Below are positions 3,552 through 60,187 of a DNA stretch of 64,000 nucleotides, one piece after another. The stretch covers positions 124,001 to 188,000 of IMG/VR virus record IMGVR_UViG_3300020469_003050; one strand, 5' to 3'. A program made the position numbers and the translations under genes. How positions within the stretch are numbered: position 1 is the stretch's first letter; each line of letters starts with the position of its first letter. The notes below the pieces were generated by a model, which saw only the letters and a program-made list of their open reading frames with translations, had not been told where the DNA came from and did not search any database.

Positions 3552-3587
3552 AAAAACTTGACAATATAACGATTCGTGTTATATTAT
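3552..3587 (+). promoter_or_regulatory. early promoter, CGAWTCG class
   Basis: AAAAACTTGACA-atataa-CGATTCG-tgt-TATATT, nearly identical to 43634-43669. Confidence 0.75.
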
Positions 3588-3617
3588 ATACATAATAAAC
3601 AAATAGAGAGGTTAATT

Positions 3618-5204
3618 ATGAATATGAAAACACTAATTGCTACAGTATCAATGATTGTAGCATTGACTACTTCATCGAATGCGATGGATGAAAGTCAATT
3701 TAATCAAATGAAAAAGGAAGGTATGATTACCACGTTTGGTAATTACGTTTCTACTAATAATAAAATAGATACTCCTTGGGGTTCTCATTATTATTTACCT
3801 AGTGATACATTCATGAAGAAAACACAAAGCGAATATAGTGAAGTGTTTTGGACTAATGGATTTGCTTGGGGTAACTTTAATGGTGATAATACTCCAGACT
3901 TGTTAATGGCATGGGAATTGCATACACAATGTCAAGGACAGATGTATGAAGATAAACATACTGGTACTTACTTTTGTCTTGCTGAATCATTAGACGACAA
4001 GAGAGGTATGTTACCATTCTCTATCTTTGAAGTTGATGCTAATGGTAGAGAAAGTTTAGACCATTTACTTATTAACGATGTTAGCATAGGTGCTAGAAAT
4101 TGTATGAGACCTATCGTAGCTGATTTCAATAGTGACGGTATAGATGATATCTATTGTGGAAGTGCATTCGGTGTTAAACATAATGGTAAGAGAACACATG
4201 GTGGTGCAGACTTTGTTTTCATTTCTAATGGAAAAGGTCAATGGATTAGAACTAAAGAAAAAGGTGATAACGTAAATAAAGAGCATGGCATTTACATGGG
4301 CTTCTCTCATGGTATTACAGCCGCTGATATTGATAACGATGGTGACATCGATGTTATTACTCCTCATATTAAATGGGAAAGTGTAAGAGGTGGAGGTAAA
4401 ATTTATTGTCATATAAATGATGGTAAAGGTAACTTCACTGTTAAGTGGTGTGCTGACCAGTTTGCTCATGCAGTTACAACAGGTGACTATAACGGTGACG
4501 GTCATGTAGACTTGATGGCTTCACATGGGTGGCATCAAAGTCCTGCTTACAAGCATAACAATTCTAAAAAGCATAACCAAACTGTAATCTTGTTTGGTGA
4601 TAGTTCAGGTAAGTTTGGTAAATCTAAATCAACTAAGAAGTGGTTATACCCAGAACCAGCATATGACATCTACGGTTCAGGTTACATGTTAACTGATGTT
4701 ATCGGTCCAGTATCATGGGACTTTGATAACGATGGTGATGTAGATATCGCAGGTTCATCAATTGGTCCTCTTTATGTCGGTGGTACTCATACAGTATGGG
4801 CTAACGATGGTAAAGGTAACTTCACTGTTGCAGACCAAGTTCCAATGATCCCTTCTCCTGACTTTGTTAAAACAAGAAAAGGATTTAAGAAGAACATCAA
4901 AATGGAAAGCAATCAATGGAATTCATTTTGTACTAGAAGTACGTTGATTGATGTTAATGAAGATGGTCTAATGGATATCTTATGTGATGCTTCTCCTCAA
5001 GACAAGCATGGTGGTTGGTTCTTTGTTAACAAAGGCGAACTTAAGTTTGAAAAAGTTTCTCCATACAAAGCATGGGAAAACGGTTGGGTTGACTACTACA
5101 CAAGTATATATGGTGGTCAAAACAAAAAGTTTGAAGGCTTCTCTGACCCTGATATGATGGCTCCTGGAGCAGGTTGGTACGTATATAAGTCAGACTTCAA
5201 ATAA
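3618..5204 (+). CDS. secreted FG-GAP/VCBS-repeat beta-propeller protein
   Basis: Signal peptide MKTLIATVSMIVALTTSSNA; six DxNxDGxxD-type repeats (NFNGDNTPD, DFNSDGIDD, DIDNDGDID, DYNGDGHVD, DFDNDGDVD, DVNEDGLMD); RBS AGAGAGG at 3605. Confidence 0.85.
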   Translation: MNMKTLIATVSMIVALTTSSNAMDESQFNQMKKEGMITTFGNYVSTNNKIDTPWGSHYYLPSDTFMKKTQSEYSEVFWTNGFAWGNFNGDNTPDLLMAWELHTQCQGQMYEDKHTGTYFCLAESLDDKRGMLPFSIFEVDANGRESLDHLLINDVSIGARNCMRPIVADFNSDGIDDIYCGSAFGVKHNGKRTHGGADFVFISNGKGQWIRTKEKGDNVNKEHGIYMGFSHGITAADIDNDGDIDVITPHIKWESVRGGGKIYCHINDGKGNFTVKWCADQFAHAVTTGDYNGDGHVDLMASHGWHQSPAYKHNNSKKHNQTVILFGDSSGKFGKSKSTKKWLYPEPAYDIYGSGYMLTDVIGPVSWDFDNDGDVDIAGSSIGPLYVGGTHTVWANDGKGNFTVADQVPMIPSPDFVKTRKGFKKNIKMESNQWNSFCTRSTLIDVNEDGLMDILCDASPQDKHGGWFFVNKGELKFEKVSPYKAWENGWVDYYTSIYGGQNKKFEGFSDPDMMAPGAGWYVYKSDFK

Positions 5205-5230
5205 GAATTAACTCTCTATTAAACTAAATT

Positions 5231-5258
5231 AGCCCGGCTTTATGTCGGGCTTTTTTAT
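5231..5258 (+). terminator. rho-independent terminator
   Basis: AGCCCGGC-tttat-GTCGGGCT followed by a T-tract. Confidence 0.85.
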
Positions 5259-41100: not shown

Positions 41101-42550
41101 CGTCCGTACCTGTAATACTTAGATTTGAATGATGTCCTGTAACATCGTCCATTTCAAAGTAACGAGAATTACCTGCAAAACTTGTGTTAACTGATTTTAA
41201 TTTTTTTACAATGTTATTACCTAGTGTTAAAGGATAAACATTATAGTCTTGTGCGTTAACCATTCTATCTTGTGAATAGTATGCCTTCTGTGCAATTCTT
41301 CTTACACTTGTAAATGTTTCACCTGCAAAGTTTTCACCAAAGTCTTTGGTGCTTGCCATAGTAATTGATAGTCTGTATGTTTTATCATCTGCGCCTACAT
41401 ATGGAATAGATATAGCAACGTTATCAATATCGCCTGATTGAATAGAAAAGTTTTCATTTGAAACTGTTCTGAACCATGCTCTATAATCTCCAAATGCCGC
41501 ATTACCAAATATCCCATCTGGATATCTTAATTCTATTGTATTGTTTGTACCTGTTGTTATGTGTACAATATCACCTGAACCTGTTCTTAAAGAATTATAT
41601 ATTGCAGTTTCACGTGTATCATTATCAACTTTAGTAACATCTGATTTGTATAATAAATTTGAATCTAACTTGTGTAACCAAACATCTGTGTTAGAAACAT
41701 TTTCATTTGTAATTGCTTCTACTCTGTTAGACATTTTCACGCCATAAGAAAAGTTTTCAAATTCTAATGTTCCTGCTTTTGCTAAAACAAAGAAACCTGT
41801 TCTGTCTGATGCGGGACCTAGATTATCATTTCTATTAATAAGTGTGAAATTTTTATCATTCAGTGGAGCACCTTCTATGATTTTATCATTCTCAAAACTT
41901 GCTCTTACTGCCTCAAATCTTCTATTCGCTCCTGCTACATTTGTTGTAAATGCATACGCAATAGATTTTGATGAAAGTGATTCATTTATTTCGTACAGAT
42001 AATTTTCTACATTACCAACTGTTAAACTTGCACTAGGATCTTGAATTTTTGTATTTTTATTGAAAGAAGAATTTAGAATTGTAGTGAATTTTTCATACCA
42101 ATCTACATCGTTAGAGTCGTTCCAGTTTACAACGACACCGGCGAGAGAATTACCTTCGTTGTCTGCAACATCTTCTGTAGTAGTTACGCTTGTGATTTTC
42201 ATCATACCACTTGCATTGATTGGTCTTGTTTTTATATAACCAAGTGTTCTTGCCATACGCAAAATACTTTCACGGCGTTCAGCCGTATCCATAAAGTTTT
42301 CACGTGTGTTCATGTCATTTCTAAATGCTAGTGAATGACCTAAGTATGCTACAAGGTCTAAAATCGCAATGAATTCAGAACTTGCTATAAAATCATTAAA
42401 TTTTTCTGGATATGTCTTATTGATGTACGCAAGTAAACTTTCACGTATTGTATCGAAATCATAAGACTTCAAACTCACGTTACTGAAAGCAGTATATACA
42501 CTGGTCCAGCTTTCACTTGCAAATAAGTTATCTACTCTTTCTTGACTCAT
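38153..42550 (-). CDS. gp6: baseplate wedge subunit, T4 gp6-like
   Basis: DFDTIRESL...FNDFIASSEFIAILDLVAY...ENFMDTAERRESILRMARTLGY; QDRMVNAQDY. Confidence 0.85.
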   Translation of the reverse strand: MSQERVDNLFASESWTSVYTAFSNVSLKSYDFDTIRESLLAYINKTYPEKFNDFIASSEFIAILDLVAYLGHSLAFRNDMNTRENFMDTAERRESILRMARTLGYIKTRPINASGMMKITSVTTTEDVADNEGNSLAGVVVNWNDSNDVDWYEKFTTILNSSFNKNTKIQDPSASLTVGNVENYLYEINESLSSKSIAYAFTTNVAGANRRFEAVRASFENDKIIEGAPLNDKNFTLINRNDNLGPASDRTGFFVLAKAGTLEFENFSYGVKMSNRVEAITNENVSNTDVWLHKLDSNLLYKSDVTKVDNDTRETAIYNSLRTGSGDIVHITTGTNNTIELRYPDGIFGNAAFGDYRAWFRTVSNENFSIQSGDIDNVAISIPYVGADDKTYRLSITMASTKDFGENFAGETFTSVRRIAQKAYYSQDRMVNAQDYNVYPLTLGNNIVKKLKSVNTSFAGNSRYFEMDDVTGHHSNLSITGTDGSVFVEDEPMSVALFFNRNSGDADDFVRNEMSRALGHASLFNKYHFLYKNDVSANRVINESYTKSDLNNLQIDGASGAPWGVAQGDYLHLVGTSGTEYHARVVRVVSPDTSGLSVDPSSVVLDKIIPEDGTVKTAIRGYRTKFIEDAGLGITEISDVKQKIVDDASTFTLYYDLRDNATDLWTWKIWDGVVDISSKISLEFKYNAGIRASEAMYTAKFTGKRVVFESYDQVKFYYGNKNIIVDNETNLAERDKILINYYDGGSLNVLPDTKYNDIVTIGYAPVTGFQSNGTGGGTFNAVYRHTGAKDNLELIDPTSVNIDNPLTPTKYTHQLVSPVGITYDLPDGSVTSPTAANENIIGADPQYTITLEVADISQFIANVTSIETGSSVNSSTETFISSDTIPIVTDTSAAAVANAEASFSTVTSTNLENTYGFKGLPSLAYFGTAPTTNNFLWIDISALPTGETSTSATFGMTGVQKDFITGFDTNTNLFTFTYPFKNWGVLADGTGGDGITSADNIPNDVRFRQLAYGELNFSTTESITQFNMIIKDANDNIIDNEHLELVAGSGNAYKIIFWTIDPGVGSLYNIFIGDGSATTDLDDFSVKVIAEIEVAKGVETQTSSYATTGAYVYDDFRINTGYDDARKVKLLTLDTKGNPYGILNIFNSTDAQNNILISKFVQESYIEPTLNITLHRAAKTATAGPASNNTIAPAVQSPDYTLWFNTDNNSWYLYQAGIWTTSFVYNEVVTGPNSVMYYGDSEYAVVDGKSFVEDKFMSYRWDHYADIDKRIDPSTSNIVDMYVLTSDYVRRVNQWIAGGFKTEIPVAPNNFELKSLMGGIEPKSAIADHISYIPVKFKYLFGAYATPENQASFKVVKKSGTAYTDSEVKTAVSSKVNEYFALDNWEFGDTFYFSELASYLHQQLGDYIASVVITPKFSTSEFTDLLSITSEPNEIFLSVTTSENVKCISAISTSELQGEDVTSNG

Positions 42551-43635: not shown

Positions 43636-43667
43636 AAACTTGACAAAATAGCGATTCGTGTTATATT
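43634..43667 (+). promoter_or_regulatory. early promoter, CGAWTCG class
   Basis: TTGACA(43640)-aaatag-CGATTCG-tgt-TATATT. Confidence 0.75.
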
Positions 43668-43691
43668 ATTATCTTAACTGAGAGATAATAA

Positions 43692-44663
43692 ATGATAAAA
43701 AAATTAGTAATTGCTAGTCTATTTCTGTCTTCATCTGCATTCGCAGATAGCTATGGATATAGCTACAAAAATCTTACACATATAATGGATAGTAAAACTG
43801 CAAACATGATGCAGTTTTCAGATAACTCTAAACACATGCCACGTGAACGATTACAGTTTGGTAACTTTCACGGTCGTGATGCATTAGAAATTACATTAAA
43901 ACAATCTGATATAGGTAGCATCGGTGATGCTGGTCGTGATATGGGTTGGGGTAATGCTCAACGTATTCAAATACGTGAAAAAGAATATAAACGTGAAATG
44001 TGGGACGGAAAAGAATACTGGTATAAGTTATCAATGTTCATGCCTAAGAATTTAGGAAGTAATAATCATACAGTTAGTTTGTTTGATTTGAAATTAAGAA
44101 AAAATAAACAAGAAGGTACACAAGTATTTTCATGGAATATCACTAATGGTGAATTAGGTTTTCAACTTGAAACTGGTGACTGGTTATGTTGGACACGTAA
44201 AATAGACGGTGGGGCAAATCGTAAACAATGCTCTTTTAAAGATAATTTTATTTCAATACCAAAAGACAACTATCGAAACAAATGGGTCGATGTTGTTATG
44301 CAAATCAATATGATTAAAGGAAAAGAAATATTTCGTGTGTGGGCAAACGATGAACTAATATTATCATTTGCAGGCGATATCAATCCTTTTGGTCGTGAAT
44401 TGGGATTTAAGTTTGGATTATATAGACATCATATGACTACTAAATTAGAAGATGATGTTGCATATTATTCTGATATCAAACGAGGCAAATCTTGTTCTGA
44501 TTTGAATGTAAATTGTGATAAGTTTATGAATGATTTTTCTGGTCTAGGTGCATTTAATATGCAGAAAGTATTACATGTAGAGAAATATGTAGAAAAAAAT
44601 GGACCTAAACTAAGATTTAATGATATTTGTTATAAAAAAGAGTGCGAAAACTTGACAGAATAG
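43692..44663 (+). CDS. secreted polysaccharide lyase-like (beta-jelly-roll) protein
   Basis: Signal peptide; ALEITL...QRIQI...KEYWYKLSMFMP...NKWVDVVMQI...VWAND...FKFGLYR. Confidence 0.7.
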   Translation: MIKKLVIASLFLSSSAFADSYGYSYKNLTHIMDSKTANMMQFSDNSKHMPRERLQFGNFHGRDALEITLKQSDIGSIGDAGRDMGWGNAQRIQIREKEYKREMWDGKEYWYKLSMFMPKNLGSNNHTVSLFDLKLRKNKQEGTQVFSWNITNGELGFQLETGDWLCWTRKIDGGANRKQCSFKDNFISIPKDNYRNKWVDVVMQINMIKGKEIFRVWANDELILSFAGDINPFGRELGFKFGLYRHHMTTKLEDDVAYYSDIKRGKSCSDLNVNCDKFMNDFSGLGAFNMQKVLHVEKYVEKNGPKLRFNDICYKKECENLTE

Positions 44664-44679
44664 CGAATCGTAGTATAAT
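44648..44679 (+). promoter_or_regulatory. early promoter, CGAWTCG class
   Basis: TTGACA(44652)-gaatag-CGAATCG-tag-TATAAT. Confidence 0.75.
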
Positions 44680-44709
44680 ATACTTATATTGAATGAAAGA
44701 GAGGACTAA

Positions 44710-45057
44710 ATGACTACATATCAAGAAGTTGCAAACGAGGCAAAAACACAGGCTGTACAAGCAGTTGATACATTTTTCAATGATGTTTTAAAAGGCGAAG
44801 ACCAATATGCATGTGGTTTTGCATGGGTTACTGTTTATCCTGAAAACAAAGGTAACACTAAACTTGGTAAAGCAGAACGTAGGGGTTTAGAATCTATTGG
44901 ATTTAGTAAAGACTGGACAGGCAAGGCTTGGCAGTTGTGGAATCCAGGTGAGTATCGAGGTCAAAACATTGACGCCAAAGAAAAAGGTGCAGAAGTTTAT
45001 GCTCAAGTAATGAAATCATATGGTTTCAAAGCATATGCTGGTTCAAGGTTAGACTAA
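44710..45057 (+). CDS. hypothetical phage protein
   Basis: Own promoter and RBS GAGAGG; ACGFAWV...QNIDAKEKGA...YAGSRLD. Confidence 0.75.
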   Translation: MTTYQEVANEAKTQAVQAVDTFFNDVLKGEDQYACGFAWVTVYPENKGNTKLGKAERRGLESIGFSKDWTGKAWQLWNPGEYRGQNIDAKEKGAEVYAQVMKSYGFKAYAGSRLD

Positions 45058-45093
45058 AAAACTTGACAGATTCGAGAATCGTGTTATTATAAT
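45058..45093 (+). promoter_or_regulatory. early promoter, CGAWTCG class
   Basis: TTGACA(45063)-gattcg-AGAATCG-tgt-TATTAT. Confidence 0.75.
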
Positions 45094-45116
45094 TACATAA
45101 TCAAAGAGAGGGAACT

Positions 45117-45464
45117 ATGAAATTTAAACTATATCAAATTCATCTTACAGATGCAGAAGTTGACAAAGTTAATGCTGAAGGACATAATAGTGTTCCTAAG
45201 CATCTAACTAAGTTGGATATGTCTTTCGCTAAAGACGAAGTAGGTTCATTAGCTAAAAAGGCAATGGATAATAATTGGTACACTCATGTATCAAACATTA
45301 CTGCTGACGGTTTAGAAAACGTGTTTGAAATAGGTAACATTGGTCCAGAAGAAAACATTGAGCGATTGGCTCCTATGTATTCTGTTAGTGTTAGTGACGT
45401 AGTTGAAAATGAAGATGGCGAACAATTTGTTTGTGCATCAATTGGTTGGAAGGAGGTAGCATAA
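45117..45464 (+). CDS. hypothetical protein, YodL-like
   Basis: FKLYQ...LENVFEIGN...YSVSVSDVV. Confidence 0.55.
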   Translation: MKFKLYQIHLTDAEVDKVNAEGHNSVPKHLTKLDMSFAKDEVGSLAKKAMDNNWYTHVSNITADGLENVFEIGNIGPEENIERLAPMYSVSVSDVVENEDGEQFVCASIGWKEVA

Positions 45465-49204: not shown

Positions 49205-52200
49205 CTATGGCGTTGGTGGGTTAACAACTACAAAATCACCTTCATTATATTTGACGGTCATTTTTAGTGGTCCACCTTCTTCATCATTACTAATATCGTT
49301 AACGTCTCCGACACCTCTATTTGGAGATATAGCAACGTCTGGATATTCGTTTGATATTGTTTGTTTAATATTTTTACTGTTTAATCCTGGTTTATAATAA
49401 TCAAATGAATTAGGTGCCGCAGTACCGTCTACTAATCCAAAGTGTGTAGCAGGGTCTGTGACTGTTACTTCTTGTCCACTTGAGTTTGTATAAGTTATAG
49501 GACCTATAGCACTAAAGTCTAATACTTCCTCAGTCATTGTTACCCCTCCGACTGTTTCAGTTATTGTTGCTCTTGGTGCCGCTTCGGCTTTTTCTATTAA
49601 TTCATTGTATACAGAAGTAGCACTGTTATATTGATTGACTTGTGTTTGTGATATTTGCCCATTTGCTACTGCACCTTCTACATTGTTAATAGCAGTTCCA
49701 CCACTATCGCCTAATGTTTCTACTACAGGAATAGGTGCATTCTTATTTGGTGCTTTAATAGGTTTAGTTACTTTTTCGTATGTAACATCTCCGCTGGCAT
49801 CTTCTACTGCAATTACACCTGTTGTTACACCTTCACTAGTATCAAGGTCACTTCTTAATTGATTTACTTCTGCTTGTAATACTTCTGCTTTTGCTCTATC
49901 TTTATTTCTTCCATAGTTTCCTGTAAAGTAAAAACCATTATCAATATCGTCATTAAGTTCATCTAACTCTGACTCTTTAGATGTTAGTACTTCTAATTTT
50001 TTCTGGTCTTTTACACCTTGAATTGCATCGCCTCTAATACCAGATGTTGCATTTTCTGTTATAGTGTCTATAGATTTTTCTATAGTTTTAACTTCTGCAT
50101 ATTCTTGGTCTGTTAAATCATGTAACCCTCTGCCATCAATTATATCTTGTGCTTCTTGATTCAATGCAGAAACTTTATCAGCCTCGTTGGCAGTCAATGT
50201 TCCGCCTTCGACATTAACATTATAACTTCTAGGCATTCTTCCGGAAGCATATGCATCATGACTTGAAGAAAATCCTAAGTTATTAAGTTCAACGTCACCA
50301 TCAAGAATTGCATTTGGTCCGTCGACACTATTTGCTTTTTCGGTATTTGTTGCCGTCCCGTCTGCATCAACTACCTCTAAGTTATCCATAATTGATAACG
50401 GTTCTTTTTTGATATCATCGTTGCCTTTAACATATCTTTCTGATTCAATTCTATTTGCATCATTGATTGCATCTAATTCATTTTGGTCTACTCCAGTAAC
50501 GTTTGTTCCTATTGTTGCATTACCTGATGCCTCAAGAGCATGGTCTATCTCTGCCATAGTTTGTGCAGAAACAATGTAACCATTATCTATTGACTCATTG
50601 TATGCATTACGTGTTGACTCTGCTACTGAATTGTTTCCTGTTTGATAATCATCTGCTAATCTTTTTGCGATATCATTTGCAGATTGTTGTACTGCAACAC
50701 AAGATTGTTGATGTCCTAATGCACATAGACCCTCTGCCTGTTGTCTAGCAAGTGCTAACTGTTTTGCAACTGATTCATTTGGTACTGCATAATCGTTTTG
50801 GTTTGAAGGTTCAAGAAAGTTGGTTGTTGCATTTTGTAATGCCATGACCGCATGCGGACCTGTTGCTGATACATCGACTATATATCTATCGCCTTCTGGA
50901 GTAACTCCTGTACCTGCTCCCGCTGGTGCGACTATATCATCTGCAAATTCTTTTGCTTCTATGTCTGCTTTTTCATTTGGATTTTCTAATCCGTTCCCAG
51001 GATCATTAACTCCTAGTAACGGTTGAATTTCCATTTGTGCTACATCTAAATTTACTAACTCTGGTTCTGGTGCATCTAATGTTGCATCTATTTTTACAAA
51101 TTCTTCTGCGGCTGGTAATTTAACTAAACCTAATGTTTGTGTAAATAATCCACCACTAAAAGAACTAATAACAGATTGTACAGAATACACACTAGTTATT
51201 AATCTTGTCTTTTTTATACCATCATAATTTTCTGAATCTTGTCCTACACGATTTGGATCATTTAAAAATACATCTTCTGCTTTATCAGAAACTAACATAA
51301 GATAGTTACAACCATTAATTTTAGAAAGATGCATCTTATAATCTTCAAGGGAATTCTTATTACCAAACTTTGCTTTCTCCATAGAAGGAGACAGAATACT
51401 ATCTACCCAATATGGGTCACCCTTAATTGTCATATTAACATTCAACATACTTAAGTTATTATTTCTGCCTTCATAATATTTTTCCATTGCAACTTCAATG
51501 TTTTCTTGGTCTGGTGATTTAATAACATTTAAGTTAGTAGGTTGTGACAACATAGACTTTGTAATACGTGAAAAGTTAATTGGGTTTTCTACAAGTGCTT
51601 TTAGTAAACTAGAAAACTGGTCTTTGCTTAACTTATTAATCATTTCTTTATCTAGGTCTTCTGAAAGTATAAGTTCTTGTCCTTCACTGCCAGGGAATAA
51701 ACCAAGTTCATTCCAATTATCGCCTATCATATTTGTACTCTCAATAATTTTAGTTGAGTACAAATGTCCTAATGCTTCACGCATAACTTCATTTTGGGTT
51801 ACTTCGTTTTCTTTTTGGTCTACTAATGTTTGATTAAGGTCTGTTCTTGTCTCTTGAATTTGATTGTGAAGTTTGTTGTAGTTTTCACGTACTTCGCCTT
51901 TGAAAATTTCATTAATGATTTCGTATTCTTCTGAATCCTCATCAAACATTTCTAACATTTGATTTGCATCTGCGTTTTCAATAGCATTTAATATATCTGC
52001 TACGTTTGAATCAACTGCATTGTCTGGACCAGTAATTCTTCTTTTAACTCTTTCTTTGAATTCGTTTTTTATTTCGTTATTCAAATCATCAAATCTTTTT
52101 TGATATTGATTTGATGCAGTTTTCAGCATCTTAATGCCATCTTTTAATCCAGTTGCTTGACCTTCTAATTCTGTTAATTTTTGTTCTGCCCTTGAATCAA

Positions 52201-54082
52201 TTTCATTTCTCCAATCACCAACAGTTTCTAAAAAACTATTTGCCATATAAGCATCACTAGGAAGCACATATGCTTTTTGTAATTGATTTGATAGACTAAT
52301 AGTTAAATCTAAAATATGTTCGTTTCTGCCTGTATATTGATAATAATATCTTTTATTACAATGACCTTCTAAAAATACTGAACTTAATATCTTTGCCGTT
52401 TGTTCTGTTAGTTTTGCACTGTGTAATTGATTTTGAACAATTAATGCTTTTTGTACAGTAAGAAAATATGTAACTTCATATGTTTGTTTGCTAGTTAAAA
52501 CATTATAACCGCCTAACTTAGGTCTTGCGTGTGGTAAAATTCTAAACAAGTTACTCAACTTTGGTTTTTCGTCTGTCAATGCTTCTCTTATTTCTTTAGA
52601 GTTTAAACATATGCTTTCTATTGCATTATATATAGATGAGCCGGGTGTTATGACACCTGTTTGTTGTCCTATTTTTACTGAATTCTTTTTTGATGTTTCA
52701 TTATTGCCTGAGGCTTTATTAGCCTCATCTGGTGAAGTCATTTGTCCTTGTGCAAACATTTGTTTGAAGTTATCATCCATTTCAAACTTATAATCGTTTA
52801 TAAATTCTGAGTCTCCAACTATTGACCTTTCGACTACTTTTTCATTTAATTTTTTGAAAAAGTTTTCTAATGTTTCTTGTAATGTATCAGCAACATCAAA
52901 CTCAAAGTTGTATTCCATTTGTGATAAATCTGAATCTGCAATAACTTTATCATTTACTATTGTTCCATCGATAACAAGATTTGTTCCTTTTGATTCTGTG
53001 ACAGATTGTAATTCATTATATTTTGTAATTACGAATGGGAATATTTTTGTTGCTGGTAAATTCTTTACTACGTTTCCATCATTATCATATCCTTTAAAAC
53101 GCACCTTCATAAAGAATGTTGCATTTTGTAAATCAGGATATCCACAAATTAAAATACTATTGTTTAGCATATCAGGAAGTGATGTTCCGCCAACTTGTGA
53201 AATTGTAAATTGTAGATTAGTGGCAGTGCCTGCCATCTTTGATGCAGTAGATGTGCCTTGTCCGACACTGGTTACTGTTAAGTCTGTAATGTTTAATTCT
53301 GTTGTTATTCCTGTTCTTGCAATCGTAACCACGTTCATATCATTTGTAGGCCAAGCATCATTTACAATGTCGTCCATCATTTGTGGTGTTTGCTCGTATG
53401 CAAGAAATTTATTTGCTTCTTGTTGATTAACAATAAACAAATCTAAATTATAAGTATAATGTTCAAATGCATCTAATTCGTTTTCCCAAAACAAATTTTG
53501 TGCTTCCATGTTTTGAATTAGTTCAGCTAGACTGGCAGATGATTTAATTGCATTTCGTTTTTTATCTTCAATATCTGATATGCCTTCTACTTCTGGTTCT
53601 TGTATTACTTCTCCATTAGATATTAGTTCTCGTTGGTCATCATCGTCAATAACAGGAACGCCGTCTGGTTGAGTACCGTACGCCATACCTAATCCGCCTT
53701 CAATACTGTCTCCGAAATAATCTAATGCTTCTTGTCCGCCTTCTTTTTGGATCATAGCCGAAACCATTTTTTCTGCTAGTTCTGGATTAGCAGATAAATC
53801 AATGGAAGCATCTTTATCTATTCCCATTTTTGATGCAACGAAGTCTACATAACCAGTAGTATCATTTTCGTTAGGTGGAGCCCAACGTTGAATTATTCCT
53901 TCAACTGTGTTTAGTCCGTGTTTGTCTTGATAAGTTTCTAGTGTTCTACCTAATGCTCTAACACCATGTTCTGGTGTGGCAAAAGAAACAAATGCGCCAT
54001 CGTCACCTGTCTTACCTTTCCAAGCAGTAGAGTTTGTTCTAATATTGCCTGGGTTATTATTTCTTACACTTCTAACTGCCAT
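49205..54082 (-). CDS. baseplate hub-like protein with an N-terminal lysozyme-like (NNPGNI) domain
   Basis: VRNNNPGNIR...FATPEHGVRAL...RWAPPNEN; hub-type YTYNL, YYYQYTG, MTIKGDPYW. Confidence 0.65.
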   Translation of the reverse strand: MAVRSVRNNNPGNIRTNSTAWKGKTGDDGAFVSFATPEHGVRALGRTLETYQDKHGLNTVEGIIQRWAPPNENDTTGYVDFVASKMGIDKDASIDLSANPELAEKMVSAMIQKEGGQEALDYFGDSIEGGLGMAYGTQPDGVPVIDDDDQRELISNGEVIQEPEVEGISDIEDKKRNAIKSSASLAELIQNMEAQNLFWENELDAFEHYTYNLDLFIVNQQEANKFLAYEQTPQMMDDIVNDAWPTNDMNVVTIARTGITTELNITDLTVTSVGQGTSTASKMAGTATNLQFTISQVGGTSLPDMLNNSILICGYPDLQNATFFMKVRFKGYDNDGNVVKNLPATKIFPFVITKYNELQSVTESKGTNLVIDGTIVNDKVIADSDLSQMEYNFEFDVADTLQETLENFFKKLNEKVVERSIVGDSEFINDYKFEMDDNFKQMFAQGQMTSPDEANKASGNNETSKKNSVKIGQQTGVITPGSSIYNAIESICLNSKEIREALTDEKPKLSNLFRILPHARPKLGGYNVLTSKQTYEVTYFLTVQKALIVQNQLHSAKLTEQTAKILSSVFLEGHCNKRYYYQYTGRNEHILDLTISLSNQLQKAYVLPSDAYMANSFLETVGDWRNEIDSRAEQKLTELEGQATGLKDGIKMLKTASNQYQKRFDDLNNEIKNEFKERVKRRITGPDNAVDSNVADILNAIENADANQMLEMFDEDSEEYEIINEIFKGEVRENYNKLHNQIQETRTDLNQTLVDQKENEVTQNEVMREALGHLYSTKIIESTNMIGDNWNELGLFPGSEGQELILSEDLDKEMINKLSKDQFSSLLKALVENPINFSRITKSMLSQPTNLNVIKSPDQENIEVAMEKYYEGRNNNLSMLNVNMTIKGDPYWVDSILSPSMEKAKFGNKNSLEDYKMHLSKINGCNYLMLVSDKAEDVFLNDPNRVGQDSENYDGIKKTRLITSVYSVQSVISSFSGGLFTQTLGLVKLPAAEEFVKIDATLDAPEPELVNLDVAQMEIQPLLGVNDPGNGLENPNEKADIEAKEFADDIVAPAGAGTGVTPEGDRYIVDVSATGPHAVMALQNATTNFLEPSNQNDYAVPNESVAKQLALARQQAEGLCALGHQQSCVAVQQSANDIAKRLADDYQTGNNSVAESTRNAYNESIDNGYIVSAQTMAEIDHALEASGNATIGTNVTGVDQNELDAINDANRIESERYVKGNDDIKKEPLSIMDNLEVVDADGTATNTEKANSVDGPNAILDGDVELNNLGFSSSHDAYASGRMPRSYNVNVEGGTLTANEADKVSALNQEAQDIIDGRGLHDLTDQEYAEVKTIEKSIDTITENATSGIRGDAIQGVKDQKKLEVLTSKESELDELNDDIDNGFYFTGNYGRNKDRAKAEVLQAEVNQLRSDLDTSEGVTTGVIAVEDASGDVTYEKVTKPIKAPNKNAPIPVVETLGDSGGTAINNVEGAVANGQISQTQVNQYNSATSVYNELIEKAEAAPRATITETVGGVTMTEEVLDFSAIGPITYTNSSGQEVTVTDPATHFGLVDGTAAPNSFDYYKPGLNSKNIKQTISNEYPDVAISPNRGVGDVNDISNDEEGGPLKMTVKYNEGDFVVVNPPTP

Positions 54083-56954: not shown

Positions 56955-57560
56955 ATGAAAAAAGATTTATATGTATTAATCACAGGGAACAAGTACTATG
57001 GGCTTTGCAAAGCGATATGCAATCTTTTTGATAGTGTGGATAATATTAGTTATCGCACTGCTAGTCGTACAAATGATTGGTCGTTAGATAAGAATTCTGA
57101 ACAAGAAAGATTGGCTGAGTATTTTGTCAATGAAGGGTTTGATATCTTCATTAACAATTCAGCATTATGGAAATTTCACCAGATAATGATTGCAGAACAT
57201 GTTTATAATAAATGTGTAGAAAAAGAAAGGTCTGCACATATTATTAATATAGGTTCTACTGCCGATACAGGTGTAAAAGGTAGAACATGGAGATATCCAA
57301 CAGAAAAGAAAGCACTAAAAGATTATAATCGTGATTTAACATACATGACAATGGGAGGTTCTAATATCAAATCAACACTGATATCACCGGGTAGTTTAAC
57401 AACACCAAGTGTAATGAAGAAACATCCTGATAGAAAGTTCTTAGATACAGAGTATGTAGCTGAGTTGATTTTATGGTTGATTAATCAACCAGATTATGTT
57501 AATATTAATGAAATTTCTGTAGATCCAATACAGACAGGAATATACGCAAGAGAGAGGTAG
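56955..57560 (+). CDS. short-chain dehydrogenase/reductase
   Basis: LITGNKYYGL, DIFINNSA, IINIGST, YPTEK (YxxxK), ISPG. Confidence 0.85.
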   Translation: MKKDLYVLITGNKYYGLCKAICNLFDSVDNISYRTASRTNDWSLDKNSEQERLAEYFVNEGFDIFINNSALWKFHQIMIAEHVYNKCVEKERSAHIINIGSTADTGVKGRTWRYPTEKKALKDYNRDLTYMTMGGSNIKSTLISPGSLTTPSVMKKHPDRKFLDTEYVAELILWLINQPDYVNINEISVDPIQTGIYARER

Positions 57561-57564
57561 ACGT

Positions 57565-59382
57565 TTGTTAAAAATTAAGAATATAACGGTCCGTAACTTT
57601 ATGAGTGTTGGGAACGTAACACAGGCAGTAGACCTGGAACGTGACAACTTAACACTTGTATTAGGTAACAACCTAGACTTAGGTGGTGATGGTTCTCGTA
57701 ACGGTACGGGTAAAACTACACTCATCAATGCATTATCATATGGTATGTATGGTAACGCACTTACCAATATTAGAAAAGATAATCTAATTAATAAGACAAA
57801 TGGTAAGAACATGATTGTTACTATTGACTTTGAATTTAACGGAAGTCAATACAGGATTGAACGTGGACGTAGACCTAATGTATTTCGTTTTATCAGAGAC
57901 GGTATCGATTTAAACGATGGCGGTGGTGATGAAGCACAAGGTGAAATGAGACAAACTCAAACAGAAGTTGATTCTATTATTGGTATTTCTCATTCAATGT
58001 TCAAACACATTGTTGCACTTAATACGTACACAGAACCATTTCTTTCAATGAGAGCAAATGACCAACGTGAACTAATCGAAGAACTATTAGGTATTACTGA
58101 ATTGTCTCGTAAAGCAGAGGCACTTAAAGAAGTAATCAAAGAAACAAAAGACCAGATGAAAGACGAAGAATACAGTCTTAAAGCAAAAGAAGATGCAAAC
58201 ACTCGTATTCTAAAAAGTATTTCAGACATTGAACGTAGACAACGTATCTGGAAAGATAAACACGAAACAGAATTAAAAGAATTAGAGTCAGCCTTAGAGG
58301 CGTTATCTCATGTAGACATCAAACAAGAGATTGCTAATCATCAACTATTAAATGAATTTACCGAAAAGAAATCTAAGTTAGATGAAGCACAACGATGGGT
58401 TGATAGTATCAATACTGATAATCAAAAATTTTCCGATTTAGAAACAAGAGTTATTAGTGATATAGAAAAGATTAAAGACCATAAATGCTTTGCATGTGGA
58501 CAAGAAGTACACGATAGCAAACAAGAAGAAATTCTAAAAGAAAAAGAAGAACTATTAGGTGAAACTAAATCTCATTTAATGGAAAATGCAACTAAGTTAG
58601 AAACACATACATCAGTAATTAGTGAAGTAGGTGAACTTGGTAATAAGCCTACAGTATTTTATGATGATTTAAATGATGCATACGAACATCAAAACTCAGT
58701 TAGTATGTTGAAAGAACAAATCGAAACTAAAAAGAAACAAGAAGATCCTTATACTGAACAGATTAAAGAAATGCGTGAAAGTAGTTTAGAAGAACTAAAT
58801 TACAATACAATGAATGCACTTGTTTCTTATCGTGAACACCAAGACTTCTTAATGAAACTATTAACAAATAAAGATAGTTTTATTCGTAAAAAGATTATTG
58901 ACCAAAACTTATCTTATCTAAACACACGTTTAGAAAAGTATCTTGATAGACTAGGTTTACCTCATGAAGTTAAATTTATGAGTGACTTAACTGTAGAAAT
59001 TACAGAGTTAGGTCGTGAACTAGACTTTGACAATCTATCAAGAGGTGAACGTAATAGACTTATTTTAGGTCTATCATGGGCTTTCCGTGATATATACGAG
59101 TCACTATATAGCACTATTAATGTTCTATTTGTTGATGAACTTATTGATAGTGGAATGGATACGAACGGTGTCGAATCATCACTAGCAGTTCTTAAGAAAA
59201 TGCAACGTGATAGAAATCGCTCTATCTTTTTAGTATCTCATAGGGACGAATTATATGGTCGTGTGACTAATGTTCTTAATGTGATTAAAGAAAACGGCTT
59301 TACTACTTTCTCACAAGAGGATGCAATAGAGGCGGAAACAAATGAAATGACTAAACCACAAGAAGGAGTACCAAATGTCTGA
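57565..59382 (+). CDS. gp46: Rad50/SbcC-like recombination ATPase (gp46)
   Basis: RNGTGKT Walker A, CFAC zinc hook, LSRGE signature, FVDE Walker B. Confidence 0.95.
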   Translation: MLKIKNITVRNFMSVGNVTQAVDLERDNLTLVLGNNLDLGGDGSRNGTGKTTLINALSYGMYGNALTNIRKDNLINKTNGKNMIVTIDFEFNGSQYRIERGRRPNVFRFIRDGIDLNDGGGDEAQGEMRQTQTEVDSIIGISHSMFKHIVALNTYTEPFLSMRANDQRELIEELLGITELSRKAEALKEVIKETKDQMKDEEYSLKAKEDANTRILKSISDIERRQRIWKDKHETELKELESALEALSHVDIKQEIANHQLLNEFTEKKSKLDEAQRWVDSINTDNQKFSDLETRVISDIEKIKDHKCFACGQEVHDSKQEEILKEKEELLGETKSHLMENATKLETHTSVISEVGELGNKPTVFYDDLNDAYEHQNSVSMLKEQIETKKKQEDPYTEQIKEMRESSLEELNYNTMNALVSYREHQDFLMKLLTNKDSFIRKKIIDQNLSYLNTRLEKYLDRLGLPHEVKFMSDLTVEITELGRELDFDNLSRGERNRLILGLSWAFRDIYESLYSTINVLFVDELIDSGMDTNGVESSLAVLKKMQRDRNRSIFLVSHRDELYGRVTNVLNVIKENGFTTFSQEDAIEAETNEMTKPQEGVPNV

Positions 59383-59632
59383 TTTTAAAATGGTTCATAA
59401 GCCACATAAAATGTTAGAATGGCTTGAAGGTGAATGCACTGAATGGGCTCATGGCATAATCAAAGAACATTTTCAAGTAGAAGATACTGATACATTATCT
59501 AAGGAACAAATCGAAGAAGTTATTGCTGAATGGGAATTACTAGCCGATAGTCCAAGTTATGATTTCTTGTCAATGGGTTTCAGAAACATAATTAGTTCGT
59601 GGGAAAATGAACACGATGATTATTTAATTTAA
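59375..59632 (+). CDS. hypothetical protein
   Basis: RBS AAGGAG; overlaps the gp46 stop. Confidence 0.65.
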   Translation: MSDFKMVHKPHKMLEWLEGECTEWAHGIIKEHFQVEDTDTLSKEQIEEVIAEWELLADSPSYDFLSMGFRNIISSWENEHDDYLI

Positions 59633-59644
59633 AAGGAGTATAAC

Positions 59645-59821
59645 ATGAGTATACATGAACAAATCGTACAACAATACGAAAACTATTTAAGTGAACATGC
59701 CGCATGGGAAGACAAGGGCGTTAAAGCCGCGGCCGCTAGAGCAAGAAAGGCTTTAGGTGAAATTGGAAAACTTACAAAAGAAAGACGTAAAGAAATCCAA
59801 GAAAAGAAAAATAATATGTAA
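59645..59821 (+). CDS. histone H1-like Hc1-family small protein (58 aa)
   Basis: MSIHEQIVQQYENYLSEHAAWEDKGVKAAAARARKALGEIGKLTKERRKEIQEKKNNM; RBS AAGGAG; missed by the ORF track. Confidence 0.7.
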   Translation: MSIHEQIVQQYENYLSEHAAWEDKGVKAAAARARKALGEIGKLTKERRKEIQEKKNNM

Positions 59822-59828
59822 AAAGGTG

Positions 59829-59857
59829 TTGACAAGGCTTTCTGATAATGTTATTAT
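59829..59857 (+). promoter_or_regulatory. sigma70 promoter
   Basis: TTGACA-N17-TATTAT with TGn. Confidence 0.75.
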
Positions 59858-59863
59858 AGAGTC

Positions 59864-59927
59864 ATAATAAAAGATGCAAAGTGTCTCCTCTCAACCTCTC
59901 TCATCTAACTGAGCATCTTTTTTTATT
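59864..59927 (+). ncRNA. candidate small RNA with a C/U-rich anti-Shine-Dalgarno loop
   Basis: Directly after a promoter; 9 bp stem AAAAGATGC/GCATCTTTT encloses CTCCTCTCAACCTCTCTC; ends in a T-tract; no ORF. Confidence 0.5.
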
Positions 59928-59947
59928 CTCACACAGAGAGCAACACA

Positions 59948-59980
59948 AACCCGGCACTTCTGTGTCGGGTTTTTTTATTT
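59948..59980 (+). terminator. rho-independent terminator
   Basis: AACCCGGCAC-ttct-GTGTCGGGTT followed by a T-tract. Confidence 0.8.
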
Positions 59981-59995
59981 AGAAAGAGTCCGAAA

Positions 59996-60187
59996 ATGCA
60001 TAAGCCCGTTGATAAAAATAAAATTAAAGAAGAAGAAAAAGAAAAACTAAATAAACAAGTACAAGAATTTTTAAACAAAGGTGGAAAGATTTCCATCATG
60101 CCTGAAGGCGCAATCACAGAAGAAGGCCAACTGAATTATAAATTCAGACGTGGAAAGAAAAAGAACACAACTAATGAAAAAACGTAA
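59996..60187 (+). CDS. SutA-like RNA-polymerase-binding small protein
   Basis: KLNKQVQEFLNKGGKISIMPEG resembles the SutA EEFLxxGGKV motif. Confidence 0.55.
   Translation: MHKPVDKNKIKEEEKEKLNKQVQEFLNKGGKISIMPEGAITEEGQLNYKFRRGKKKNTTNEKT

What the first reader, a model, noticed from the sequence alone, without database searches (positions are those of the whole stretch)
59829..59980. Candidate ~60 nt sRNA whose loop is complementary to the phage's own GAGAGG ribosome-binding sites
Seen: a strong promoter is followed by a 9 bp stem with a 35 nt loop containing TCTCCTCTC and AACCTCTCTCAT, then a T-tract, then a second terminator, with no ORF. AACCTCTCT is the exact complement of the RBS AGAGAGGTT at 3605-3613, CCTCTCT of those at 44698 and 45105, and TCCTCTC of 44699-44705; all three genes carry CGAWTCG promoters. 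Established: C/U-rich anti-SD loops are the targeting element of alphaproteobacterial AbcR and cuckoo sRNAs. Inference: a phage sRNA that shuts off early or host translation.
Basis: partly seen in the sequence, partly recalled or inferred. Interest (0 to 1): 0.7.

Follow-up and report, generated by a model that had tools for sequence, protein, structure and literature searches.

The report
Conserved small RNA gene in jumbo phage
A 342-kb uncultivated marine jumbo phage and its relatives carry a self-contained gene for a roughly 115-base non-coding RNA whose hairpin loop, rich in C and U and unchanged across the relatives, probably pairs with ribosome-binding sites, but neither its targets nor its transcript have been shown.

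Summary
A near-consensus promoter (59829-59857) is followed by a 9-bp stem with a 35-nt loop, a U-run, a small second hairpin and a strong terminator, and no ORF is conserved.

Homologues occur in relatives whose SbcC is 74-100% identical. The stem covaries (9 of 14 pairs compensatory, 0 of 500 shuffles reach this). A 23-nt loop block (59881-59903) is nearly invariant, while the promoter spacer, flanking-gene synonymous sites and the flanking genes themselves change. It is therefore an autonomous RNA gene that matches no Rfam family.

Two corrections:
- The U-run after the first hairpin is not conserved, so the conserved unit is about 115 nt, not 60.
- GAGAGG ribosome-binding sites are a minority class; AGGAG-type sites dominate.

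Overall complementarity to start regions does not exceed that of composition-matched shuffles. It is enriched at ten promoters carrying CGAWTCG in the spacer, whose leaders use AGAGAGG(UU) (Fisher 4e-4; shuffled loops P=0.02). That promoter and RBS class is found only in relatives that carry the RNA. Metatranscriptome contigs gave no discrete transcript.

Best reading: a trans-acting sRNA with an anti-Shine-Dalgarno-like loop. This mechanism is inferred, not shown.

The parts
59829..59857 (+). Sigma-70-type promoter of the RNA: TTGACA, 17-nt spacer, TG-extended TATTAT. The predicted start is near 59864.
   Evidence: Scores 11 of 12 plus TG. The -35, TG and -10 are kept in all 18 distinct homologues while the spacer sequence diverges freely.
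59864..59926 (+). Stem-loop 1: outer pairs 59864-59867 with 59923-59926, main 9-bp stem 59869-59877 with 59913-59921, and three inner pairs 59880-59882 with 59908-59910.
   Evidence: MFE and centroid structures agree. Covariation on 18 homologues: 94% of cells paired, 9 of 14 pairs with compensatory changes, 0 of 500 shuffles as high, slid controls 38-58% paired.
59881..59903 (+). Near-invariant 23-nt CU-rich loop block with two anti-SD-like motifs (UCUCCUCUC and AACCUCUCUCA). This is the presumed functional, seed-like element.
   Evidence: Identical in all 15 versions of alignment A1. Among relatives chosen only by SbcC similarity, the exceptions are a CU insertion (L015-L017) and one divergent loop that keeps UUCUCUCU (L024). 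The block is unpaired in the predicted fold.
59918..59924 (+). U7 run after stem-loop 1. It is a possible weak first stop in this phage only.
   Evidence: The run is interrupted in most relatives, and the terminator scan does not call it.
59927..59939 (+). Small stem-loop 2 (UCUC, ACACA loop, GAGA), containing a conserved ACAGAG or ACGAGAG box.
   Evidence: Predicted in the MFE structure. The purine box is present in all homologues, but the helix differs between subgroups and its covariation was not established.
59947..59980 (+). Rho-independent terminator: 11-bp GC-rich stem, 4-nt loop, U7. This is the likely 3' end of the ~115-nt RNA.
   Evidence: Called by the terminator scan. Present at the same position in every homologue with different, self-complementary stem sequences.
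3558..3620 (+). Candidate target 1: CGATTCG-spacer promoter, short leader, RBS AGAGAGGTT (3605-3613) and the ATG of a secreted FG-GAP repeat protein.
   Evidence: 9-nt exact complement of AACCUCUCU. The RBS is identical in two orthologous loci of relatives. Pfam FG-GAP match.
43640..43694 (+). Candidate target 2: CGATTCG-spacer promoter and leader with TGAGAGA before the ATG at 43692.
   Evidence: 7-nt complement.
44652..44715 (+). Candidate target 3: CGAATCG-spacer promoter, RBS AGAGAGG (44698-44704), ATG at 44713.
   Evidence: duplex -13.6 kcal/mol. The ortholog in a relative keeps AGAGAGG.
45063..45121 (+). Candidate target 4: promoter with GAGAATCG in the spacer, RBS AGAGAGG (45105-45111), ATG at 45119.
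   Evidence: Orthologs in relatives have GAGAGAGG or AGAGAGGTT.
57551..57567 (+). Candidate target 5: RBS AGAGAGGT before the TTG start of the SbcC-like gene.
   Evidence: 9-nt complement GAGAGAGGT (duplex -19.3 kcal/mol).

Best explanation
The locus is an autonomous gene for a trans-acting small RNA of about 113-117 nt (about 59864 to 59976-59980). In this phage there may also be a ~60-nt form ending at the U7 run.

Host sigma-70 RNA polymerase would start at a near-consensus, TG-extended promoter. The RNA folds into a long AU-rich hairpin that presents about 25 unpaired, G-poor nucleotides, followed by a small second hairpin and a Rho-independent terminator.

The near-invariant loop carries two anti-Shine-Dalgarno-like motifs. 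UCUCCUCU is the complement of the phage's common AGGAGA-type RBS. AACCUCUCU is the complement of AGAGAGGUU. I infer that the loop base-pairs with purine-rich ribosome-binding regions of mRNAs and blocks 30S binding.

The best candidate targets are the phage's own transcripts from promoters with CGAWTCG in the spacer, whose leaders use AGAGAGG(UU). This would give delayed negative control of that gene set. Host mRNAs may be additional or alternative targets.

Shown here: the gene anatomy, the covariation, the loop conservation, and the autonomy from flanking genes. Inferred: transcription, pairing, the direction of the effect (repression), and the identity of the targets.
For: - Promoter, hairpin and terminator are as described.
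- The loop 21-mer is exact in 20 IMG/VR contigs. There are 18 distinct homologues.
- Stem covariation: 9 of 14 pairs compensatory, 0 of 500 shuffles reach this.
- The loop is near-invariant while synonymous sites of the neighbouring Hc1-like gene and the promoter spacer vary. Five versions have a different upstream gene.
- Two versions have a fresh promoter right after the terminator.
- No conserved ORF.
- The phage RBS repertoire is purine-rich: AGGAG is 19-fold and GAGAG 12-fold enriched upstream of starts.
- Leaders of the CGAWTCG promoter class are enriched for complementarity of 7 nt or more: 5 of 10 against 27 of 409 (Fisher 4e-4; P=0.02 against shuffled loops).
- The class and the AGAGAGG RBS are present in RNA-bearing relatives (16 promoter sites and 13 RBS sites) and nearly absent in relatives without the RNA (0 and 1).
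- Orthologous leaders keep AGAGAGG(TT).
- Duplex energies are -13.5 to -19 kcal/mol.
- The nearest cultured relative, PA5oct, depends on host RNA polymerase (PMC7318152).
Against: - No transcript evidence. Metatranscriptome contigs stop before the promoter, or belong to relatives and run through the terminator into the next gene.
- Complementarity to all 415 start regions is not above composition-matched shuffles.
- The longest phage match (11 nt) is lost in the closest relative although the loop is unchanged.
- The ten class leaders are partly paralogous cassettes, so the effective sample is small.
- The co-occurrence with the RNA separates only two clades, about one evolutionary event.
- Twenty-three invariant nucleotides are more than a usual 7-12-nt seed needs. 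This hints at a partner other than assorted RBSs.
- A generic anti-SD RNA would also hit the phage's own AGGAG sites.
- The host is unknown.
Confidence: 0.45

Rival explanations
1. The RNA is a protein-binding decoy or scaffold. The invariant single-stranded pyrimidine tract would be recognised by a host or phage protein that binds C/U-rich RNA, such as ribosomal protein S1, Rho, a cold-shock protein, an RNA chaperone or a nuclease. The RNA would titrate or recruit that protein rather than pair with mRNAs.
For: All 23 loop nucleotides are fixed, more than a base-pairing seed normally requires. No conserved extended complement was found in the phage. The exact 18-mer occurs in 185,579 species genomes only at chance level: 18 hits observed, about 17 expected by my own estimate. 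General RBS complementarity is explained by composition alone.
Against: No candidate partner has been identified. The order of letters in the loop fits the class-specific RBS better than 98% of shuffles, which a purely compositional pyrimidine-binding site would not need. The divergent L024 version keeps only the CUCUCU core.
Confidence: 0.2
2. The main targets are host RNAs (mRNA leaders or a host sRNA), not phage genes. The phage would use the RNA for host takeover, and the matches to its own RBSs would be incidental.
For: The RNA sits among likely takeover genes: an Hc1 histone-like protein upstream (Pfam E 1.6e-11) and a protein with a weak SutA RNAP-binding domain downstream. Strict loop conservation across diverged phages would fit a conserved host sequence. 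Known phage sRNAs mostly act on host transcripts (review PMC12197685, abstract only, listed).
Against: The host is unknown, so this could not be tested. No exact 18-nt complement exists in the species genome collection beyond chance, though shorter pairing was not examined.
Confidence: 0.2
3. The element acts in cis as a leader, attenuator or antitermination element for the downstream gene. Under this reading the promoter serves the gene at 59996, and the hairpins and terminator set how much transcription reads through.
For: In this phage only 15 nt separate the terminator from the next start codon, and there is no promoter in between. One contig from an RNA library, belonging to a relative, runs from the loop through the terminator into the next gene.
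Against: The downstream gene differs among relatives. Two lineages place a separate consensus promoter after the terminator. A loop sequence fixed across different downstream genes is not what a gene-specific leader would show.
Confidence: 0.08
4. There is no functional RNA. The conservation would reflect a DNA-level site (a protein-binding or polypurine-polypyrimidine tract), a tiny peptide, or a chance arrangement.
For: CU-rich 20-nt windows are not rare in this genome: 49 on both strands. A promoter-like site also lies on the minus strand at 59880-59853.
Against: Compensatory changes in the stem are an RNA-level signal. Promoter and terminator are conserved around the element. No synonymous-type variation occurs in the loop, and indels break the frames. 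By my reading of the sequences, the minus-strand promoter-like site is not kept in relatives.
Confidence: 0.04

Closest known systems
Cuckoo / CcsR sRNAs of Alphaproteobacteria (Rhodobacter CcsR1-4, Sinorhizobium NfeR)
   Same: They are small RNAs whose hairpin loops display C/U-rich anti-Shine-Dalgarno sequences and that often sit next to a small protein gene (PMC8034643). Here too a CU-rich anti-SD-like sequence lies in a hairpin loop next to a 58-aa gene.
   Different: Cuckoo RNAs have two hairpins, each with CCUCCUCCC in the loop. This RNA has one large loop with two different motifs (UCUCCUCUC and AACCUCUCUCA) and no CCUCCUCCC. It has its own promoter, is encoded by a lytic-type jumbo phage, and gives no Rfam match.
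Betaproteobacteria toxic small RNA (Rfam RF02278)
   Same: It is a short RNA of 57-92 nt with a terminator (lengths and terminators from PMC4603805). It gave the lowest E-value among the sub-threshold Rfam matches (0.018). From my own knowledge of the family, not checked here, it also has pyrimidine-rich loops.
   Different: The score is 22.3 bits against a gathering score of 50, so this RNA is not a member. That family is chromosomal in Burkholderia and relatives, and its native function is unknown.
AbcR1/2, RsaE/RoxS, RepG and Yfr1 (bacterial sRNAs with C/U-rich seeds)
   Same: They share the working principle: an unpaired C/U-rich loop or linker pairs with G/A-rich ribosome-binding regions and blocks initiation. 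Yfr1 is also marine and has an ultraconserved CU-rich single-stranded core. All of this rests on my own knowledge of these families.
   Different: There is no sequence or covariance-model similarity. Those RNAs are encoded by cells, not phages. This loop is longer and carries two motifs.
T4 RegB endoribonuclease
   Same: It has the same proposed outcome. In a phage of the wider T4-like supergroup, early messages are inactivated by an attack on their Shine-Dalgarno sequence (RegB cuts GGAG). This rests on my own knowledge.
   Different: RegB is a protein nuclease. Here the proposed agent is an RNA acting by pairing. No RegB search was done in this genome.
ncRNAs of Pseudomonas phage PA5oct
   Same: PA5oct is the nearest cultured relative (SbcC 51% identical). 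It uses host RNA polymerase and expresses four ncRNAs, two of them very abundant (PMC7318152).
   Different: The PA5oct ncRNAs are 236-619 nt and lie at other genome positions, not next to its SbcC gene. They have no reported CU-rich loop. No homologue of the present RNA was found in the GenBank phage collection.

Membership tests
Trans-acting base-pairing sRNA (general class) | Own promoter and Rho-independent terminator bounding a short non-coding unit | tested here: met
   The promoter scores 11 of 12 plus TG, and the terminator has an 11-bp stem plus U7. Both are kept in 18 homologues while the surrounding sequence diverges. No conserved ORF.
Trans-acting base-pairing sRNA (general class) | Conserved secondary structure supported by covariation | tested here: met
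   94% of cells paired, 9 of 14 pairs with compensatory changes, 0 of 500 shuffles as high, slid controls 38-58% paired.
Trans-acting base-pairing sRNA (general class) | Conserved single-stranded seed region | tested here: met
   The 23-nt block 59881-59903 is near-invariant and unpaired.
Trans-acting base-pairing sRNA (general class) | Conserved complementarity to defined target mRNAs | tested here: inconclusive
   Not above composition-matched shuffles genome-wide. Enriched at CGAWTCG-class leaders (Fisher 4e-4, shuffled loops P=0.02) and kept in orthologous leaders. The longest match is not conserved.
Trans-acting base-pairing sRNA (general class) | Discrete short transcript in vivo | tested here: inconclusive
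   Contigs from eight public runs (seven RNA libraries and one of unrecorded type) show no discrete RNA. Such libraries and assemblies do not retain small RNAs reliably.
Cuckoo / CcsR RNAs | Two hairpins, each with a CCUCCUCCC loop motif (PMC8034643) | tested here: not met
   The motif is absent. There is one large loop with two other CU motifs, and no Rfam match.
Betaproteobacteria toxic small RNA (RF02278) | Covariance-model score at or above the family's gathering score | tested here: not met
   22.3 bits against a gathering score of 50.
Any Rfam 15 family (including AbcR, Yfr1, marine IMES and GP20 motifs) | Match at the gathering score | tested here: not met
   No matches in the whole 64-kb window. 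All matches at a permissive E-value are far below threshold and lean on the terminator.
Cis-regulatory leader / attenuator | Constant linkage to one downstream gene with no intervening promoter | tested here: not met
   Downstream genes differ, and L091 and L024 have a separate promoter after the terminator.
RNA anti-CRISPR (solitary CRISPR-repeat mimic) | Loop or stem sequence matches a CRISPR repeat found in arrays in bacterial genomes | tested here: not met
   The exact 18-mer gives 18 single, scattered hits in 596 Gb. By my own estimate that is the number expected by chance (about 17). None is repeated within a locus. Only exact matches were tested.

The most novel reading that the evidence does not exclude
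A family of marine jumbo phages uses an RNA to switch off a promoter-defined set of its own genes. Under this reading, transcripts from the CGAWTCG-spacer consensus promoters carry a private ribosome-binding site, AGAGAGG(UU). The phage sRNA, made from an equally strong promoter, accumulates and masks exactly that site. This would be an RNA counterpart of T4 RegB's attack on early Shine-Dalgarno sequences, with the RBS dialect and the RNA having arisen together in one clade.
Probability: 0.25. Interest if true: 0.8.

Novelty: new member of a known kind. Interest (0 to 1): 0.58.

Why it matters
Few regulatory RNAs are known from virulent phages, and to my knowledge none from uncultivated marine jumbo phages. 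The literature searches here turned up none of this kind.

This RNA has unusually clean comparative support: a conserved promoter and terminator, a covarying stem and a near-invariant loop. It also comes with a concrete, testable target hypothesis, namely a distinct RBS type tied to a distinct promoter type.

If the hypothesis holds, it shows a phage timing its own gene expression by masking a private ribosome-binding sequence with an RNA. It would also add a new RNA family to annotate in viral metagenomes. Even if the targets turn out to be host RNAs or a protein, the 23-nt invariant loop marks a strongly constrained phage-host interaction.

Tried and rejected
- **Rfam:** no match at gathering thresholds over the whole window. 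A permissive search of 59780-60050 gave only sub-threshold hits that lean on the terminator.
- **tRNA/tmRNA scan:** none.
- **GenBank phage collection:** blastn of the locus found no match.
- **Paralogues in the 342-kb genome:** the covariance model found none. The only other hit (E 0.5, window 5200-5258) is an ordinary terminator.
- **More distant relatives** (SbcC 57-60% identical): no homologue by covariance model or by a promoter-plus-CU-loop-hairpin scan.
- **Exact 18-mer of the loop in 185,579 species genomes:** 18 scattered hits, which I estimate to be the chance number. This gives no host copy, no perfect host target and no CRISPR-repeat origin.
- **Extended complements in the phage:** three sites of 11 nt or more, about the number I estimate by chance. 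Two lie on RBSs, at genome positions 4723 (13 nt) and 218216 (11 nt).
  - The 218216 site is not kept in the closest relative.
  - The 4723 gene belongs to a very widespread family with no close relative available.
- **RNAduplex of the loop against 415 start regions, and counts of exact matches:** neither differs significantly from composition-matched shuffled loops.
- **Public RNA runs (two read-laying runs):**
  - Contigs from three runs of one sample and a fourth run cover the SbcC 3' end and the two small genes and stop at 59711-59812.
  - Runs chosen with the RNA itself hold only relatives' versions, and one of those contigs reads through the terminator.
  - This is neither support nor refutation.
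- **Loop-independent pattern search (stem plus SL2 box) in IMG/VR:** The only true homologues had the same loop.
- **RBS search in small fragments of divergent-loop lineages:** too little sequence to say anything.
- **Minus-strand promoter-like site at 59880-59853:** by my reading of the sequences it is not conserved in relatives, so I rejected it as chance.
- **Coding readings:** the 33-codon GTG frame on the + strand is broken by indels in relatives. I rejected a 16-codon frame on the minus strand because the loop shows no synonymous variation.

Full report
**Context.** The window is bases 124001-188000 of a 342,607-bp IMG/VR virus record with direct terminal repeats, rated complete, at about 34% G+C. 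The flagged locus lies just downstream of SbcD- and SbcC-like recombination nuclease genes. The SbcC protein is 51% identical to that of Pseudomonas jumbo phage PA5oct and 42-47% identical to those of the Atu_ph07, Phosso and Vibrio 2.275.O jumbo phages. PA5oct relies on host RNA polymerase (PMC7318152). Hundreds of uncultivated relatives exist in IMG/VR. The runs that hold this sequence are labelled marine, seawater or hydrothermal-vent metagenomes.

**The observation.**
- Promoter: TTGACA at 59829-59834, a 17-nt spacer, TG at 59849-59850 and TATTAT at 59852-59857. It scores 11 of 12, the best promoter-like site in the surrounding 3 kb.
- First hairpin: from about 59864 the RNA would fold with a 9-bp main stem (59869-59877 with 59913-59921). 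Four outer pairs extend it and three inner pairs narrow the loop, leaving about 25 unpaired nucleotides at 59883-59907.
- 3' elements: a U7 run, a 4-bp second hairpin (59927-59939) and an 11-bp GC-rich terminator with U7 (59947-59976) follow.
- Stability: folding is far more stable than for shuffled sequence, z = -6.4 for the whole unit and -4.3 for the first hairpin alone.
- Coding: the only + strand ORF is a 33-codon GTG frame, and single-base indels in relatives break it.
- Known families: no Rfam family and no tRNA matches.

**Comparative evidence that it is an RNA gene.** The 21-nt loop core occurs exactly in 20 IMG/VR contigs. Loci chosen only by SbcC similarity give an unbiased sample. 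Every examined locus whose SbcC is 74% or more identical carries the element. Loci at 57-60% identity do not.

Eighteen distinct versions were aligned to a covariance model. On the first hairpin:
- 94% of cells form pairs.
- 9 of 14 pairs show compensatory double changes, for example GAUGC/GCAUC to GAAGU/GCUUC to GGAAGU/ACUUCU.
- None of 500 column shuffles reaches the observed values.
- Sliding the partner columns drops pairing to 38-58%.

The 23 nucleotides 59881-59903 behave in the opposite way:
- They are identical in all 15 versions of the first alignment.
- In the unbiased set they differ only by a CU insertion in L015-L017 and in one divergent lineage, L024, which still keeps UUCUCUCU.
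- In the same sequences the promoter spacer is scrambled while the -35, TG and -10 stay put. Synonymous sites of the upstream gene change freely, and the terminator stem changes by compensating substitutions.

The unit is also mobile relative to its neighbours:
- Ten versions follow a 58-aa gene and five follow other genes.
- The downstream gene varies.
- In L091 and L024 a second consensus promoter follows the terminator.

Together this identifies an autonomous, selected, non-coding RNA gene.

**Corrections to the description.**
- The U-run after the first hairpin is continuous only in this phage and its closest relatives. Elsewhere it reads UUUAGUAUU or UUUAUUAUU, and the terminator scan does not call it. 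The conserved unit therefore ends at the second terminator and is about 113-117 nt. A ~60-nt species is at most a local by-product.
- The phage's general ribosome-binding site is the ordinary AGGAG/AAGGA/GGAGA type (19-, 14- and 15-fold enriched upstream of starts). GAGAG-containing sites are a minority, 25 of 415 genes, though they too are enriched 12-fold.

**Targets.** AGAGAGGTT at 3605-3613 and AGAGAGG at 44698 and 45105 are each correctly spaced before an ATG. Taken as individual matches they are not remarkable.
- Against 415 predicted start regions, the loop makes exact matches of at least 7, 8 and 9 nt in 31, 11 and 4 cases. Loops shuffled with the same composition average 25, 7 and 1.8, giving P of 0.15-0.25.
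- Duplex energies tell the same story.
- The longest complements in the genome are 13 nt at genome position 4723 and 11 nt at 218216, both on ribosome-binding sites. I estimate that this many matches would arise by chance.
- The 218216 site is disrupted in the closest relative although that relative's loop is identical.
- No perfect 18-nt complement or copy exists in 185,579 species genomes beyond my chance estimate of about 17 hits.

One signal does stand out. The 'CGAWTCG promoters' are a sharply defined class: AAAACTTGACA, six bases, CGAWTCG, then TGnTATAWT. That is a consensus sigma-70 promoter with a palindrome in its spacer.
- Ten occur in the genome, all on the + strand.
- Their short leaders mostly end in a GA-repeat ribosome-binding site, AGAGAGG(UU). 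That is the complement of the loop's second motif, AACCUCUCU.
- Five of the ten automatically delimited start regions have 7 nt or more of complementarity, against 27 of 409 other genes (Fisher P = 4e-4). By eye it is six of the ten leaders.
- Only 2% of shuffled loops do as well on this class.
- In relatives the promoter class is present in four of five RNA-bearing contigs (16 sites in 572 kb). It is absent from five contigs of the sister group that lacks the RNA (0 sites in 683 kb).
- AGAGAGG-N3-9-ATG sites show the same split, 13 against 1.
- Orthologous leaders keep AGAGAGG(TT) while the sequence upstream of it drifts.
- The genome itself has eight such sites in front of ORFs of 78 codons or more, including the SbcC-like gene, against two for the reversed pattern. 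Predicted duplexes are -13.5 to -19 kcal/mol.

Two caveats apply. The leaders are partly duplicated cassettes, and the presence/absence pattern separates two clades, so it counts as roughly one evolutionary event.

**Transcript evidence.** Public metatranscriptome assemblies hold parts of this region.
- In four RNA runs (three from one sample), contigs identical to the window cover 58941-59812. That is the SbcC 3' end and the two small genes, and they stop before the RNA's promoter.
- Runs selected with the RNA sequence itself contain only relatives' versions. One 151-nt contig from a vent metatranscriptome runs from the loop through the terminator into the downstream gene of a relative.
- Assemblies of standard libraries neither retain small RNAs nor give ends, so this is uninformative either way.

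**Mechanism.** The supported part is the gene: a strong host-type promoter, a structured RNA, a terminator and a selected single-stranded loop.

The inferred part is that the loop pairs with purine-rich ribosome-binding regions. It carries the complement of the common AGGAGA-type site (UCUCCU) and of the class-specific AGAGAGGUU (AACCUCUCU). This is how cuckoo/CcsR RNAs work (PMC8034643). From my own knowledge, AbcR, RsaE/RoxS, RepG and Yfr1 work the same way.

I put 0.45 on this reading overall and about 0.25-0.3 on the specific version in which the CGAWTCG regulon is the target. Alternatives:
- A protein decoy (0.2). The length of the invariant block argues for it.
- Host targets (0.2). Untestable without a host.
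- A cis-acting leader (0.08). The variable downstream context argues against it.
- No RNA function (0.04). The covariation argues against it.

**Relation to known families.** It works like the C/U-rich-loop sRNAs but belongs to none of them. It lacks the CCUCCUCCC motif and two-hairpin layout of cuckoo RNAs. It scores 22 bits against RF02278, which needs 50, and it matches no other Rfam model. It is not homologous to the PA5oct ncRNAs by position or size, and no homologue of the locus was found in the GenBank phage collection. I class it as a new family within a known kind of regulator, found in a setting (virulent-type marine jumbo phages) where such regulators are hardly documented.

**Verdict.** Interest is moderate to high because the gene is certain, the family is new, and the target hypothesis is specific and cheap to test.

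Noticed in passing
window 3558-3586, 43640-43668, 44652-44680, 45063-45092; genome positions 48160, 48882, 236948, 337736, 340307, 340525: Ten near-identical consensus promoters (AAAACTTGACA, six bases, CGAWTCG, TGnTATAWT) carry a 7-bp palindrome inside the spacer. All are on the + strand. The class is conserved in close relatives and absent from the sister clade. The palindrome looks like an operator or a promoter-class mark.
   Followed up: partly
window 59645-59821 (+): The 58-aa protein just upstream of the RNA matches the Chlamydia-type histone H1-like protein Hc1 (Pfam PF07432, E 1.6e-11). Its C-terminal part (59762-59815) appears in several metatranscriptome contigs at higher depth with different flanks, so the motif is widespread in these waters.
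   Followed up: partly
window 59996-60187 (+): The 63-aa basic protein right after the terminator has a sub-threshold match to the SutA RNA-polymerase-binding domain (26.8 bits against a 29.3 cut-off). This hints at an RNAP-directed takeover factor and a gammaproteobacterial host.
   Followed up: no
window 59880-59853 (- strand): A promoter-like site (TTTGCA, 16-nt spacer, TATAAT; 10 of 12) overlaps the RNA's own -10 on the opposite strand. By my reading of the relatives' sequences it is not kept, so it is probably chance.
   Followed up: yes
genome 4132-4722 (- strand; locus L123:236-823): This 196-aa protein has a hydrophobic, signal-peptide-like N-terminus. Its RBS and spacer are a perfect 13-nt complement of the 5' part of the loop (AGAGGAGACACTT, then ATG). 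It belongs to a very widespread viral family, with more than 600 IMG/VR matches at 50-70% identity and no Pfam domain.
   Followed up: partly
window 29302-42550 and 49205-54082 (- strand): There are three very large ORFs of 2952, 1465 and 1625 aa. They were not examined.
   Followed up: no
window 5229-5258 (+): The terminator after the FG-GAP gene has nearly the same stem as the RNA's terminator (CCCGGC...GTCGGG followed by a T-run). This explains the weak second covariance-model hit.
   Followed up: yes
loci L107, L110-L113 (genome contigs): Five of the 18 chance-level genome hits for the loop 18-mer are in Stahlbacteria or WOR-3 metagenome-assembled genomes. This may reflect a conserved sequence in that lineage, and I saw no sign that it is related to this phage.
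   Followed up: no
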